Positions 2,582 to 26,970 of a stretch of 64,000 nt of DNA are shown here, piece after piece. Made by a program: the position numbers and the translations under genes. The DNA is taken from contig NC_058131.1 of the NCBI RefSeq assembly GCF_016433145.1, positions 485,677,229 through 485,741,228 on the forward strand, written 5' to 3'. Source of the DNA: Gracilinanus agilis. Lineage: Eukaryota. The notes under the pieces are model-generated. The model searched no databases, was not told where the DNA came from, and saw nothing but the letters and a program-made list of their open reading frames with translations. Within the stretch, counting starts at the first letter, position 1, and every line of letters starts with the position of its first letter.

Positions 2582-2697
2582 GACATATTATGCTGCTCTT
2601 GTGTGTGTGTGCTGCTAATTCTCTTCTTTCTTTTTCCCCCCTTCCTTCTCCTCTTTCTTTCCTCTTCCTTTCCCTCCTTTTGGAAATGCCTCAACAG
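2582..2697 (+). promoter_or_regulatory. 3' splice-site region of the 18-nt exon: (TG)6, branch-point-like TGCTAAT, pyrimidine tract, UGC motif
   Basis: No AG from about 2582 to 2695; (TG)6 2600-2611; TGCTAAT 2613-2619; TGC 2687-2689. Confidence 0.75.
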
Positions 2698-2715
2698 ATG
2701 TCAGTCAAAGTCCAG
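2698..2715 (+). CDS. NRXN3: NRXN3 SS1 microexon, 18 nt, phase 1-1, (D)VSQSP
   Basis: Long pyrimidine tract, then tgcctcaacag|ATGTCAGTCAAAGTCCAG|gtgagt (strong donor). With a preceding G it reads GAT GTC AGT CAA AGT CCA G. Confidence 0.9.
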
Positions 2716-3034
2716 GTGAGTCTTTGTGTTTGACTGAGAAAGGGAGAATCCTTTCTTTATTTTGGATATGCATGTTTTGTGTGAATCTGTTTTTGCTGGG
2801 GGGGGGGGAATGATACCAGAGAATCTGATTTTTAGCACTGGAAAGAAGCCTTAGAGGCAATCTAATTGAAACCCTTCATTTTACAGATTAAAAGAAAATA
2901 ACAACAGAGCCTCAGAGAGTTAGTTTCTCAAGACCACTTAATAAGTGGTAGAACTATAAATTAAACAATAGGGATTCTTGTTGGATTTAGAATAACCTTT
3001 TTGAAGATAATCAAAAGATTATCCCCATCTCATA

Positions 3035-3205
3035 ATATATGCACATATACACACATAAATGTATATATAAATGTATATATTGTGTATATATGATGTATAT
3101 ATGCATATACACACATATATAAGTGCTTATATAAATATATATGTGTAAATGTTATACATATATAAATGTATGCATAACATACATTTATATGGTTATATAA
3201 TTATT
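3035..3205. repeat. TA/CA-rich low-complexity tract
   Basis: Degenerate (TA)n and (CATA)n repeats. Confidence 0.85.
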
Positions 3206-3324
3206 TCCTTCTTGTTCCTTTTTCAGTTTCACATATAATCTTTTTTATTTATAAAACATTATTTCTTGATGATTGTTAAATTTGGAATTAAAGAATTAAA
3301 TTAAAAAAGAAAGGTTTCATATTC

Positions 3325-3860
3325 ACTTAGTCAACAGTTATTTATTAAGTGTTTATTTTATGTCAGGCTACCCTATGCTAAACTCTAGGGCTTCAGAGAA
3401 AGGAAAATGTAATCCCTGCCCTCAAGGAGTTTACATTCTGATGGGAAGAGAGGATAAGTAAGTAACTAGGTACATATAAGATATGTAAAGGGTAAGCTGA
3501 GGGCAGTTAGGTGGCACAGTGGATAGATCACCAGGCCTGGAGTTGTGAGGATCTAAGTTCAAATCTGGTCTCAGACATTTCCTAGTTGTGTGACCCTGGG
3601 CAAGTCATTTATCCCTGTTTACCTAGCTCTTGCCCTTCTGCCTTAGAGTTGTTACTAAAACAGAAAGTAAGAGTTTTTTTTTTTGTTTGTTTTTTGTTGT
3701 TTTTTTTTTTTTTTTTTAGGGTAAATTTGGAGGTAGATGAAAGGAGACTGAAAAATACCTATTATAGAGGGTGGGATTTGAATTGAGTCTTGAAGGAAGC
3801 CACTATTTAATGGATTTTGGGTATACCTAGAAAGTGAAGGCTGAAGCTTTGGGAAAATGA
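3325..3860 (-). mobile_element. L2 3' remnant interrupted by a SINE and poly-T
   Basis: tatttattaagtg...ccctgccctcaaggagtttacattctg is typical of the antisense L2 3' end. Confidence 0.6.
3501..3675 (+). mobile_element. SINE1/SINE2_Mdo-like SINE
   Basis: GGGCAGTTAGGTGGCACAGTGGATAG...GTTCAAATCTGG...GTGTGACCCTGGGCAAGTCA. Confidence 0.8.
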
Positions 3861-4334
3861 TTTTCAAATCATTCTCCAGTTATAAATCAACCAGCTTGTT
3901 GAGCATGTTAGCCTTATTCTTCTCATCTCAGCTTCTCAATTGTTAGGTACTGACCATTTCAGGATCAGGGCTGTATTTTGGATAATATGATATATCTCAA
4001 AGAGTTTTCTAGTCATATAACAAGAAAAAAACTGTCCTTTTGATAATCTATTTTTATCTTTCTAAATTGCATACATCTATTTTTTCTCTTAAGCTATGTA
4101 TATGCCATGGTCCATTTGTGTTAACCTGCCATTTGCAAAAACACATATGAATGGGTAGATGGAACTGACTCAGGTTTGGATGACTATTTAAGGACATTCA
4201 AAACCACTGGGGCTATTAGCTTTGAATTGAGTTTACTGAGATATTGATTTGAACTAAAGAGAATAAGTAGCCGTACATCCCATTCCTTCCCCCTTGCCAC
4301 AATAGGAATGAATCCAGTCCAACCCTTTGTAATC

Positions 4335-4537
4335 CTCTTTGGGGTTTTCTTGGCAAAGATACTGGAGTGGTTTGCTGCAGATCATTTAACATTTGAGGAA
4401 ACTGAGGCTACCAGGGCTAAATGACTTGCCCAGGGTTACACAGCTAGGAAGTATCTGAGGCCAGATTTGAACTCAGTAAAATGAGTTTTTCTGACTCTAG
4501 GCCCAGCACTCTACTCACTGAGCCACCTAGCTGCCCT
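4335..4537 (-). mobile_element. MAR1-like CORE-SINE
   Basis: ggggttttcttggcaaagatactggagtggtttgc plus core gaggaaactgaggc. Confidence 0.75.
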
Positions 4538-23802: not shown

Positions 23803-23886
23803 TTGAAATGATAACGTTGTCTTCTTTTTTCTCCCCTTCCTCCTCCCCGATCTCTCTTCTTGTCTCTCCTGTGTCTCTTCCTCAAG
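23803..23886 (+). promoter_or_regulatory. 3' splice-site pyrimidine tract of the 30-nt exon
   Basis: About 82 AG-free, C/T-rich nt ending in ctcaag. Confidence 0.75.
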
Positions 23887-23916
23887 GCCTTTCACATCTC
23901 ATGATGAGCGAACAAG
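23887..23916 (+). CDS. NRXN3: NRXN3 SS1 microexon, 30 nt, phase 1-1, (G)LSHLMMSEQ
   Basis: ctcttcctcaag|GCCTTTCACATCTCATGATGAGCGAACAAG|gtaggt. The peptide GLSHLMMSEQ is visible inside track ORF 23808..23999. Confidence 0.95.
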
Positions 23917-24746
23917 GTAGGTCCTTGATGGTCTTATTTTCCTCTCTGCCTAGCCCCAGAGCCTTTCACCTCCACTCCACTTCCTTTGGCTGGTCATAGT
24001 AGACATTGCTGCTGTTGGCTCTTTGCCTGTCCTGGCTGCCCTAAGGTGGGGGGCAGCTACTAGAAACATTATGGATCCTCAACATGCTGAATTACTCCCC
24101 TCTGCCCTCTTCATTCCCTTTGCTTTCCCATGCTCCACTACCATTTGTCAGACCAGAGGCTGTGTCCCTGCGGTGCTAGGGACTATGCCTCTGAGGAAGA
24201 AGCATGAAATGAAGCATGACAGTGGTGATAATGGGGGTGAATGAAGCTAATTTCAGAGCAAGAAAACTGGTAACTTCCTTCCCTCCCTCTCTCTTCCCCC
24301 TTCCCCTGCTGAGGGAGGGGGGGGCATTGGCCTTTTCAAACCCCCATCCTTTTGTCTTTCCCCTATTTTTCATTGTCCAGTACAAACACTCTGAAATTCT
24401 GCCTGATAAAATGCAGCCCTTGGGGGTATATTTTTATTAAAGGACTATATATGTACATATGCATTTATATGAAAATAAGAGCAACATTCTTACAAGAACA
24501 TGCTAATACCCTCATGGCATGATTCTAACTCATTATATACCCAGAAGAAAACTGCATATAAAGGTCTGTAAATTCAGCATCTGCAACCTAAAATATTCAA
24601 ATATGCATGGAATAAAATGTGCAGGAAATTCAGCTCAGCTAAGCACAGGGTGGGCTGTGAATGGGCCTTTAAAAAAATAAAAAATTTTCCACATTATCAG
24701 CCTAAATCAAGGTTCAACAACTGAGCTGTTTTAAAATTATCTTATT

Positions 24747-24748
<2 letters not shown>

Positions 24749-24798
<50 letters not shown>
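24749..24798. repeat. (AC)25 microsatellite
   Basis: Direct tandem repeat. Confidence 0.97.
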
Positions 24799-24800
<2 letters not shown>

Positions 24801-26784
24801 GAAAACCTCCTACTCAATTGCTGGTACTATTTTTCTTGGATCCTGCAATGATTGAAGGATGAATCTACCAACCTCACCCTGGAGATTAGTTCCCCTCTTT
24901 ACCCCTGCCTTTTATCCCTTTTGAAAACATAAGGAATCAACTATTCACTTAGAGGTTTGTCTTGCCCAAGAGGGAAAGAAAAGCAGAGAGGTCATCTTCG
25001 GTTGCCTCTTATGTTGCCAAAAATGTTGTTATGGCCTCTCATGGCAACTTTGGTCTTTAAAATCAAAGATAACACAGGAGAGCCAATCTTCTTCCTGTGA
25101 CTCCTTTTAACCTGTTATATCACATATTTCTGAAAAAATTAAAGGAGTAGGACCAGACCAGGAGCCCAGAGGGCTAAGATGCAATAAAGCTAGGGAGATT
25201 GTCGTGTTTCCCAAAGGTTAGCTCAGGAAGTGAGGGAATGGGGAATTGTCCTACTATAGAATTCTTTCACCCAATGTAGCCAAGTGAGGGCTTTGGATCT
25301 CCAGATATTTCATAGACCAGGTGTATGCATTGCAGCATGATATTGAAAAAATGAAGCTAGAAGAGTGGATAGAAAGCCAGTTCAAAAGGTCCCAACAAGA
25401 GGTAGTGCCTTAATTTGTATTGCAGGCGAATAAGGGCAGCAAGCAGTCACAAGTGAAAATGATGAAATGAATATGTTTAGGGTTAAATTTGAGGTTGACT
25501 AGCTTTCAAAGTGATTTAGGAGTGGTAGTGGTAGTGGAGGATCCATGACAGTATGGAGGAGAAGCTGCTGGCCTAAAATTGAGAAAAAGAAATTTTTAGA
25601 ATTAGAAAGTCAGATCAGAAGGCAAGTTGCACTGGAAAAAGTAAGTCTTGGATGGAGAGATAATTGGTTGCTATTGCTCACTGTCTAACCTTATTGTGCT
25701 CATTATTTCCTCGCAGTGATTTTGAAAGAAAATATATTATTAATTTGGTTTTCTCCATGGAACAAGTTCCAGATAGATGAGAAAGTTGAGAAGGCCTTCT
25801 TTTGTCTTGATTGAGGTTATTCAACATTCATTGCTCCCGATCTCCTTCCAGGAGAATGGTTGGGGAGGATCCAATGCTTCTGAGCCAGAAAGTTGAATCC
25901 TTACATTGGAATGAGTGCTACTTGGACAAACTAAAGTAAACACCTCTGTGATTTTTCAGCCATGGTTAAAGAATAGTATTTGGTGTTCCATGGACTCCAC
26001 AATAATGTGTCTTAGCATAGATGTAGTAGACTCACTTGAGATAAGCCAGTAAAAGAAATGTTTGTCTAGGGCCATGTTTGAATAATGAAAAGTATTAGGG
26101 TTGAAGAGTGAAACAGGAATCCTTTTACAAAGAGGAAAATGCAGAATTCTTCTGGGTGGACAGTGTTAGGAACCTCTTAAGTTATTGGTTGCTGTTGAAG
26201 CAGGTTTAACATTTGTTCTTCTACTAATTTCCCTCCCCAGGCAGAGTTTGCCACTTTCTCCCCAATTGCCAATTCCTATTTAGCTGACAAATCTTCAAGC
26301 TTTTGGTCTCTCAATTGTTCTTGTCCTTCCATCTTCTTCCTCTATTCAACCGAAGAGAAAACAATCGATATCTTGTATTCATTGAGCCAGCAACATCCTT
26401 TTGGTTGCTCATGAAAATATATGAGCATACTTATGTATGTCATATGTATGTTCATTAGTATGTGTATATACAAATTTGGTAATCATGGCTCATATTCATG
26501 TCTGGATAATATTGGAGAAATCATTTCCCCAATGACTTTCCCCTTACTTTTTTAACCAGTGTTCTATGTTTGCATTCGGTTTGGCTTAATGTGTATGTTT
26601 TAACACGAGTATGATTCTGCATGCCCATTTTGTCATCTTCTTAGGCATGGTCTGGAGAAGATGTGAAAAAAGGGAAGAGCTTAAATTGAACAGTGAGTAG
26701 GACCAAATTTGCTGGTCACACTGCTGATCATCATTTTAAGCTTTCCCTTTTGTATTTGTGCTGTGTTCCCAGAATGTGTTGTAG

Positions 26785-26970
26785 TTCTATTGCCATCACA
26801 ATTGTTTGTGTGTGTGTGTGTGTGCTTATGTGTCACATTTCTTTGTGACGGTGTGCCATGTCCTGATGTTTTGTTATCCTTGCTCTCCCTGCTCTCCTCT
26901 CTTTTGCCGCCTCCATGGTGGACGTCTTTGTTACCTCTGCTTAATCGGACCTTCCACTTCATTTCTATAG
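26785..26970 (+). promoter_or_regulatory. Extended 3' splice-site region of the 12-nt exon
   Basis: 184 nt without AG (26785-26968); (TG)9; CTGAT 26863-26867; YGCY-rich pyrimidine tract; TGCTTAAT 26938-26945. Confidence 0.7.

What the first reader, a model, noticed from the sequence alone, without database searches (positions are those of the whole stretch)
2600..26829. All three microexons, and only they, are preceded by a sense-strand (UG)n run followed closely by TGCT
Seen: (TG)6 at 2600-2611, (TG)9 at 23716-23733 and (TG)9 at 26807-26824 sit 87, 154 and 147 nt upstream of the three exons. Each is followed within a few nt by TGCT (TGCTGCTAAT, ATGCTAT, TGCTTAT) and later by an AG-free pyrimidine tract. 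By eye these are the only + strand TG runs of 6 or more units in 64 kb; the four long free-standing CA/TG microsatellites are all CA on +. Established: UG repeats bind TDP-43 and CELF proteins. Inference: one shared cis-module co-regulates the whole SS1 cassette. I am not aware of this being described for NRXN3 SS1.
Basis: partly seen in the sequence, partly recalled or inferred. Interest (0 to 1): 0.75.

Follow-up and report, generated by a model that had tools for sequence, protein, structure and literature searches.

The report
UG tracts upstream of neurexin SS1 microexons
Three tiny alternative neurexin exons each sit downstream of a TG repeat, and comparison with other mammals shows only one repeat is firmly conserved, one varies in length and one is recent, so this is a plausible but ordinary kind of GU-rich splicing control element.

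Summary
The only + strand (TG)n runs of 6 or more units in the window lie 87, 154 and 147 nt upstream of three AG/GT-flanked microexons of 18, 30 and 12 nt. This placement is far from chance (about 1e-7; 3e-5 under a loose null).

I obtained orthologous DNA from unnamed distant relatives through spurious ORFs in public assemblies. The "one shared module" reading holds only in part.
- **18-nt exon:** the tract is kept at (TG)6-7, once interrupted. It sits directly in front of a conserved branch-point-like CTGCTAAY, at the head of an AG-free pyrimidine tract.
- **30-nt exon:** the tract is orthologous but varies from 4 to 19 nt. It sits next to a conserved TGCATG.
- **12-nt exon:** (TG)9 occurs only in the window. 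Relatives have GU-rich non-repeat text there.
- **TGCT:** conserved only at the first exon.

Best reading: ancestral GU-rich intronic elements lie at the 5' edge of long branch point-to-3' splice site regions, and slippage expanded two of them in this lineage. The binding protein is untested (TDP-43, CELF or hnRNP M/LASR).

The scan noted the exons before on this same stretch, but not this feature. This is a new member of a known kind, of moderate interest.

The parts
2492..2497 (+). TGCATG (RBFOX-type motif) about 205 nt upstream of the 18-nt exon
   Evidence: Conserved in L011, L012 and L015.
2557..2562 (+). TGCATG about 140 nt upstream of the 18-nt exon, 37 nt before the TG run
   Evidence: Conserved in L011, L012 and L015.
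2600..2611 (+). (TG)6 run, inside the AG-free zone of the 18-nt exon
   Evidence: Relatives have (TG)7 (L012, L015) or (TG)4 TA TG (L011) at the same column. The V-C-V-C reading appears in the translated hits.
2612..2619 (+). CTGCTAAT. It is the only yUnAy branch-point-like motif in the 114-nt AG-free zone, with the A at 2618, 80 nt from the exon
   Evidence: The motif is CTGCTAAC in all three DNA relatives.
2620..2681 (+). 62-nt pure C/T tract
   Evidence: It is shorter but present in relatives.
2687..2689 (+). TGC between the pyrimidine tract and the AG (position of the SRRM3/4-type UGC)
   Evidence: Kept in relatives.
2698..2715 (+). 18-nt microexon (reads ..VSQSP.. in the frame shared with the other two)
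   Evidence: AG and GT flanks and the exon are kept in relatives, with one A/G difference.
2769..2774 (+). TGCATG 55 nt downstream of the 18-nt exon
   Evidence: Conserved in L011, L012 and L015.
23708..23713 (+). TGCATG 2 nt before the (TG)9 run
   Evidence: GCATG is at the matching place in 7 of 8 relatives.
23716..23733 (+). (TG)9 run, 154 nt upstream of the 30-nt exon and outside its AG-free zone
   Evidence: The orthologous tract measures 5, 9, 4, 9, 4, 9, 19 and 5 nt in relatives.
23810..23815 (+). GATAAC, aligned with the conserved YTAAC branch-point-like motif of relatives (about -73)
23887..23916 (+). 30-nt exon (LSHLMMSEQ)
   Evidence: All differences among 9 species fall on third codon positions.
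24495..24743 (+). Deeply conserved intronic block, 81-88% identical in 7 relatives
24749..24799 (+). (CA)25 microsatellite at the 3' edge of that block; lineage-specific
   Evidence: Absent in all relatives that cover the place.
26645..26649 (+). GCATG about 326 nt upstream of the 12-nt exon
   Evidence: Kept at -322 to -335 in 4 relatives.
26750..26870 (+). GU-rich region upstream of the 12-nt exon; it holds the (TG)9 run at 26807-26824
   Evidence: The GU dinucleotide fraction is in the 92nd to 100th percentile in the window and in 4 relatives. The pure run is in the window only.
26863..26867 (+). CTGAT, a conserved distal branch-point-like motif (about -105)
26941..26945 (+). TTAAT, a conserved proximal branch-point-like motif (-27)
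26971..26982 (+). 12-nt microexon (..RSK)
   Evidence: Identical in 4 relatives, with conserved flanks.

Best explanation
The three TG runs are this lineage's version of older GU-rich intronic elements. These elements lie at the upstream edge of unusually long branch point-pyrimidine tract-3' splice site regions of three neurexin SS1-type microexons.

At the 18-nt exon, a (UG)6-7 tract sits 5-7 nt in front of a strong distal branch-point motif (UGCUAAY). It is held there by selection.

At the 30-nt exon, a GU tract of variable length sits beside a conserved UGCAUG.

At the 12-nt exon, a broad GU-rich patch is conserved, and replication slippage has turned part of it into (TG)9 in this lineage only.

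Inferred mechanism: GU-binding splicing regulators (TDP-43, CELF proteins, or hnRNP M within the RBFOX/LASR complex) bind these tracts and modulate U2 snRNP recruitment at the nearby branch points. For binding this close to a branch point or 3' splice site, the expected effect is mostly lower exon inclusion.

Shown here: positions, non-random placement and the pattern of conservation. Inferred: protein binding, direction of effect and any coordination between the exons.
For: Placement is far from chance.

Relatives were obtained through ORF look-ups. They are 5-33% apart from each other. They align to the window over only 14-21% of the interval between the 30-nt and 12-nt exons, so the window is a distant outgroup to them.

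18-nt exon: the tract and CTGCTAAY are conserved in 3 DNA relatives and in 13 of 13 translated hits. CTGCTAAY holds the only yUnAy in the AG-free zone.

30-nt exon: TGCATG followed by a GT tract is present in 7 of 8 relatives.

12-nt exon: the GU fraction is in the 92nd to 100th percentile in every species.

All three exons keep AG-free zones of 68-184 nt in all species.

Literature:
- CELF2 silences exons from GU motifs at the perimeter of branch sites (PMC2715136).
- TDP-43 represses when bound close to splice sites (PMC13343711).
- TDP-43 also binds degenerate UGUAUG-type text (PMC8445024).
- Rbfox1/LASR protects GCAUG with GU-rich motifs within 1-10 nt (PMC11874969).
- Long AG-free zones mark alternative exons with distant branch points (PMC1431707).
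- Neural microexons have long branch point-to-AG distances (PMC12871342).
Against: The species of the relatives are unknown. For the 18-nt exon there are only three DNA relatives, two of them close to each other.

The tract at the 30-nt exon shrinks to nothing recognisable in two relatives. The tract at the 12-nt exon is not a run in any relative. Length variation of this sort is what neutral microsatellites show.

Conservation at the 18-nt exon could reflect constraint on the whole 300-nt block (about 75-85% identical) rather than on the UG tract itself.

The three contexts differ, so one common factor is not required.
Confidence: 0.5

Rival explanations
1. Reader's model. One uniform module, (UG)n of 6 or more units followed by UGCU, is bound by TDP-43 or CELF. 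It sits before each exon and co-regulates the SS1 cassette as a unit.
For: In the window all three exons have it and nothing else does. TGCT follows 3 of 3 focal runs against 1 of 30 others. At the 18-nt exon the whole arrangement is conserved.
Against: At the 12-nt exon, relatives have no run and no TGCT. At the 30-nt exon, the tract length ranges from 4 to 19 nt, and what follows it is mostly TGCC, TGCG or TGAC. At the 18-nt exon, TGCT is part of the branch-point motif rather than a separate element.
Confidence: 0.12
2. The GU tracts are the hnRNP M half of RBFOX/LASR multipart modules. RBFOX binds the conserved UGCAUG, LASR subunits bind the adjacent GU-rich text, and the complex sets inclusion.
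For: TGCATG lies 2 nt before the (TG)9 of the 30-nt exon, and 6-10 nt before the tract in relatives. TGCATG is enriched near the exons, with 4 seen against 0.67 expected. GCATG sites are conserved near all three exons. GU-rich motifs within 1-10 nt of protected GCAUG are the published signature (PMC11874969).
Against: The spacing is 37 nt at the 18-nt exon and more than 100 nt at the 12-nt exon, outside the published 1-10 nt range. One relative (L003) lacks the GCATG at the 30-nt exon. No binding data were obtained.
Confidence: 0.2
3. The runs are neutral microsatellites with no role of their own. Short GT seeds lie in GT-rich conserved introns and expand and contract by slippage. Their nearness to the exons reflects only the composition of conserved flanks.
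For: Length is variable at the 30-nt exon, with decay to (GTAT)3 or nothing in two relatives. The (TG)9 at the 12-nt exon is private to the window. The long CA microsatellites of the window are also lineage-specific.
Against: The tract before the 18-nt exon keeps its length of 6-7 units and its exact position across very distant relatives. Pure repeats are not expected to do this. In relatives, nearly all TG runs of 8 nt or more fall at a few orthologous sites. Placement in the window is about 1e-7 by chance.
Confidence: 0.17
4. Sense (UG)n runs pair with the sense (CA)n microsatellites of the same pre-mRNA. The resulting long-range duplexes loop out exons or bring them together.
For: Predicted duplexes are -37 to -43 kcal/mol for the two (UG)9 runs, against -10 for shuffled controls. 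(CA)25 lies between the 30-nt and 12-nt exons. All four long microsatellites are CA on the sense strand.
Against: None of the CA runs exists in relatives that cover the places. Any such pairing is therefore private to this lineage and cannot explain the conserved tracts.
Confidence: 0.02

Closest known systems
CELF2 (CUGBP2) branch-site perimeter silencing, as at the GRIN1 NI exon (PMC2715136)
   Same: A UGUGU-type motif lies directly beside the predicted branch site of a neuronal alternative exon. This fits the 18-nt exon, where the tract ends 5-7 nt before the branch A region.
   Different: The published model has GU motifs on both sides of the branch sites. Here the downstream side is a pure C/T tract. 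CELF2 binding is untested.
TDP-43 and the (UG)m tract at the CFTR exon 9 and apoA-II exon 3 3' splice sites
   Same: A sense (UG)n of 6 or more units lies upstream of an alternative exon. Repression is expected when TDP-43 is bound near the splice site (PMC13343711).
   Different: In those genes the repeat abuts the pyrimidine tract at the 3' splice site. Here the tracts lie 87-154 nt upstream, at or beyond the branch point. Two of the three are not conserved as runs.
Rbfox1/LASR multipart RNA modules (PMC11874969)
   Same: UGCAUG with a GU-rich element within 10 nt, conserved, at the 30-nt exon.
   Different: The spacing does not fit at the other two exons. The module lies upstream of the exon, where published binding maps are less clear.
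Exons with distant branch points and long AG-exclusion zones (PMC1431707), and the long branch point-to-AG architecture of neural microexons (PMC12871342; 10.1101/2024.09.17.613571)
   Same: All three exons have AG-free zones of 68-184 nt in every species. The 18-nt exon shows the full order: branch point, long pyrimidine tract, UGC, AG.
   Different: The GU tract in front of the branch point is not part of the published description of that architecture.

Membership tests
TDP-43-repressed exon of the CFTR exon 9 type | Sense-strand (UG)n of about 6 or more units close to the 3' splice site | tested here: inconclusive
   Runs of 6, 9 and 9 units are present in the window. They lie 87-154 nt from the exon, and only the first is conserved as a run.
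TDP-43-repressed exon of the CFTR exon 9 type | TDP-43 binds the tract, and its depletion raises inclusion | not testable with these tools
   No CLIP or knock-down data could be reached. Paper searches found nothing for NRXN3 SS1.
CELF2 branch-site perimeter targets | GU-rich motifs at both boundaries of the branch-site region | tested here: not met
   At the 18-nt exon the upstream side has the tract, but the downstream side is a 62-nt C/T tract with no GU.
Rbfox1/LASR multipart module | GCAUG with a GU-rich motif within about 1-10 nt | tested here: inconclusive
   Met at the 30-nt exon: 2 nt in the window and 6-10 nt in relatives. Not met at the 18-nt exon (37 nt) or the 12-nt exon (more than 100 nt).
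SRRM3/4-type neural microexon | Exon of 27 nt or less, long branch point-to-AG distance, and UGC between the pyrimidine tract and the AG | tested here: inconclusive
   The 18-nt exon meets all three criteria in every species. The 12-nt exon has a UGC at -33 in the window only. The 30-nt exon is too long and has no UGC. SRRM4 dependence was not tested.
Distant branch point (long AG-exclusion zone) exons | An AG-free zone much longer than the usual 40 nt, with a branch-point-like motif at its head | tested here: met
   The zones are 114, 82 and 184 nt in the window and 68-158 nt in relatives. Conserved CTAAY, YTAAC and CTGAT motifs lie near their 5' ends. Branch point use itself was not mapped.
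Neurexin-3 SS1 cassette | Three consecutive in-phase microexons that encode the SS1 insert between LNS1/EGF-A and LNS2 | tested here: inconclusive
The exon sizes (18, 30 and 12 nt) are multiples of three and share one open frame. The 30-nt exon shows only third-position changes among 9 species. No flanking exon is in the window. The joined peptide was not searched.

The most novel reading that the evidence does not exclude
A conserved (UG)6-7 tract sits against the distal branch point of the 18-nt exon. With the UGCAUG-(GU)n element of the 30-nt exon and the GU-rich patch of the 12-nt exon, it would form a common handle. Through it one class of GU-binding proteins (TDP-43, CELF or hnRNP M/LASR) would set the whole neurexin-3 SS1 insert. 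That would give SS1 its first known regulator and tie neurexin-3 isoform choice to TDP-43 status.
Probability: 0.2. Interest if true: 0.6.

Novelty: new member of a known kind. Interest (0 to 1): 0.4.

Why it matters
In the papers I could search, regulators are described for neurexin splice site 4 but none for SS1. The conserved UG tract in front of the branch point of the 18-nt exon, and the conserved UGCAUG sites around all three exons, give concrete and cheap-to-test candidates for how SS1 is set. The comparison also shows that a striking three-fold coincidence in one genome can be partly a lineage-specific microsatellite state laid over an older, looser GU-rich signal.

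Tried and rejected
- **Read evidence.** No read evidence on expression, joints or relatives' contigs was obtained.
- **Pattern scans.** Scans for the 30-nt exon in metagenome, genome and viral collections found nothing.
- **Sequencing runs.** The look-up of sequencing runs showed that relatives hold 13-16% of the words of 23000-27400. These words could not be localised.
- **TGCT as the SRRM4 UGC.** Rejected. The published UGC lies between the pyrimidine tract and the AG. 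The TGCT sites lie 80-150 nt upstream.
- **TGCT as branch point.** This holds only for the 18-nt exon.
- **Long-range UG:CA pairing.** It is strong on paper, but the CA runs are absent in relatives.
- **Local RNA structure around the runs.** Not different from shuffles (z 0.2, -0.7, -1.9).
- **Rfam and tRNA scans of L001 to place its species.** Nothing was found.
- **Paper searches for NRXN3 with TDP-43 or UG repeats.** No relevant hit. Three papers were not held.
- **Contig L005.** Its ORF is carried by 22 contigs, so it comes from a much-sequenced species that could be human. I set it aside and did not read, compare or search it.
- **Joined exons.** The three exons were never joined into one peptide for a search, so the gene name stays unverified.

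Full report
**Observation**

A script count of the window finds + strand (TG)n runs of 6 or more units only at 2600-2611 (6 units), 23716-23733 (9 units) and 26807-26824 (9 units). Six shorter TG-type runs of 8-10 nt lie elsewhere. The four long microsatellites are all CA on the + strand.

Each is bounded by AG and GT, all are multiples of three, and all are open in one shared phase, reading ..VSQSP.., LSHLMMSEQ and RSK. The distances of 87, 154 and 147 nt are exact. A stop-to-stop scan shows no other exon-like coding stretch in the 64 kb, so "only they" is true but has no other exons to contrast with.

The assembly gap at 13011-13140 lies in the intron between the first two exons. No run-to-exon interval crosses a gap. 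I could not test continuity across it and did not try to fill it.

**Chance**

Three randomly placed runs would each end within 160 nt upstream of a different exon with probability about 1e-7. A loose null uses any of the 7 dinucleotide runs, either side and either strand, and gives 3.4e-5. TGCT at the end of the run occurs at 3 of 3 focal runs against 1 of 30 other TG-type runs of 6 nt or more (p 7e-4, post hoc). The placement in this genome is therefore real.

**Getting relatives**

- The tools hold no vertebrate genome alignments.
I sent nothing from that place to any search tool afterwards and masked it in local comparisons.
- Pattern scans of the three public collections for the 30-nt exon found nothing.

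What worked was a detour. Gene callers had called spurious ORFs across these conserved introns in public assemblies, so protein word searches with window or locus ORFs returned them. One profile-free full search returned more. Exact look-ups then returned the contigs.

Among themselves these contigs are 5-33% apart and align end to end. The window aligns to them over only 14-21% of the interval between the 30-nt and 12-nt exons, at about 80-85% identity. The window is thus a distant outgroup. I did not verify that naming.

One contig, L005, comes from a species seen on 22 contigs. Because that could be human, I set it aside unread. The other ORFs are seen on 1-3 contigs each, so I do not take them for human.

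**The 18-nt exon**

In three DNA relatives (L011, L012-14 and L015, which are 2-15% apart from each other and 25-28% from the window) about 300 nt upstream are conserved. At the column of the window's (TG)6, the relatives have (TG)7, (TG)7 and (TG)4 TA TG. CTGCTAAC follows in every case, where the window has CTGCTAAT. Thirteen of thirteen translated ORF hits that span the site read C-V-C-type text followed by AAN or LLT, which is the same DNA in two frames.

CTAAY is the only yUnAy motif in the AG-free zone, which is 114 nt in the window and 90-92 nt in relatives. A pure C/T tract follows it, then a TGC at -11, then the AG. This is the published neural microexon architecture, with a UG tract added directly in front of the branch-point motif. 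Three TGCATG motifs, at -205, -140 and +55, are also conserved.

**The 30-nt exon**

Eight relatives cover it. All differences within the exon fall on third codon positions, which is good evidence that it codes.

About 135-170 nt upstream, most relatives have TGCATG, then 2-10 nt, then a GT/TG tract. The tract lengths are:

| Sequence | Tract length (nt) |
|---|---|
| Window | 18 |
| L001 | 5 |
| L004 | 9 |
| L002 | 4 |
| L003 | 9 |
| L006 | 4 |
| L008 | 9 |
| L009 | 19 |
| L010 | 5 |

In L006 the text is (GTAT)3, and L002 has no clear tract. The site is therefore orthologous and old, but its length drifts like a microsatellite. The tract lies outside the 82-nt AG-free zone. The conserved branch-point-like motif YTAAC (GATAAC in the window) is at about -73. 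TGCT after the tract is seen in one relative only.

**The 12-nt exon**

The exon and about 230 nt upstream are conserved in four relatives. Where the window has (TG)9, they have GU-rich non-repeat text with at most 7 nt of alternating TG, and no TGCT. The GU dinucleotide fraction of -250 to -61 is in the 92nd to 100th percentile of each contig. The (TG)9 is thus a lineage-specific expansion within a conserved GU-rich patch. This patch lies just upstream of a conserved CTGAT at about -100. A GCATG at about -325 is conserved.

**Other repeats**

None of the window's CA microsatellites exists in relatives. (CA)25 sits at the edge of a 250-nt block (24495-24743) that is 81-88% identical in seven relatives. 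Sense UG:CA pairing is strong on paper but cannot be an old mechanism. Local folding around the runs is unremarkable.

**Reading**

The conserved property is GU-richness at the 5' edge of long branch point-to-3' splice site regions, not a uniform (UG)n-plus-UGCU module.

- **18-nt exon.** The tract occupies the stretch just upstream of the branch point. From general knowledge, U2 snRNP components contact the RNA there. A GU-binding protein at this place would be expected to hinder branch-point use. This resembles what was shown for CELF2 at branch-site perimeters (PMC2715136). It also matches TDP-43 repression when bound near splice sites (PMC13343711).
- **30-nt exon.** The pairing of UGCAUG with an adjacent GU tract matches the Rbfox1/LASR multipart modules (PMC11874969).
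- **Degenerate tracts.** TDP-43 also accepts degenerate UGUAUG-type text (PMC8445024), so decayed tracts need not be inert.
- **What is untested.** Which protein acts, in which direction, and whether the three exons are coordinated were not tested.

**Known or new**

GU-rich intronic regulators, distant branch points and RBFOX sites near neuronal microexons are all known kinds. My paper searches found no description of these elements at neurexin SS1 and no named SS1 regulator. That is an absence in a partial library only.

I searched the exons one by one, never as a joined peptide.

**Verdict**

This is a new member of a known kind, of moderate interest. The conserved tract before the 18-nt exon is the best experimental handle.

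Noticed in passing
window 24495-24743: A 250-nt intronic block about 580-850 nt downstream of the 30-nt exon is 81-88% identical in seven distant relatives. It is better conserved than the exon flanks. It has no obvious exon and its role is unknown. The window's (CA)25 has grown at its 3' edge.
   Followed up: partly
window 2492-2497, 2557-2562, 2769-2774, 23708-23713, 26645-26649: (U)GCAUG motifs near all three exons are conserved in relatives. TGCATG is enriched near the exons, with 4 seen against 0.67 expected. This suggests RBFOX input to SS1.
   Followed up: partly
L001 8745-8752, L002 4211-4220, L004 4158-4165, L010 3623-3632; window about 26410-26570: All four relatives share a short TG run 450-510 nt upstream of the 12-nt exon. 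The window has TGTATG-type text at the matching place. This is a second conserved UG-like patch.
   Followed up: partly
L008 1-22 and L009 455-466: Two relatives share another TG run about 710-730 nt upstream of the 30-nt exon. The matching place in the window was not identified.
   Followed up: no
window 2698-2715 versus L011, L012, L015: The 18-nt exon differs by one A/G, which changes Ser to Gly in the shared frame. One translated hit reads Asp there. This residue of the insert is free to vary, whereas the 30-nt and 12-nt exons are fixed at the protein level.
   Followed up: partly
window 2799-2809: A run of 11 G lies about 85 nt downstream of the 18-nt exon. It is not present in the relatives, which have mixed text there.
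   Followed up: no
window 26971-26988: The 12-nt exon and its first intron bases, including the in-frame GT-containing hexamers noted by another first-stage finding, are identical or nearly so in four relatives.
   Followed up: no
window 23000-27400: Runs of several other coded organisms hold 13-16% of the sampled words of this stretch. This fits the few ultra-conserved blocks seen in the contig comparison. Which parts they hold could not be shown.
   Followed up: no
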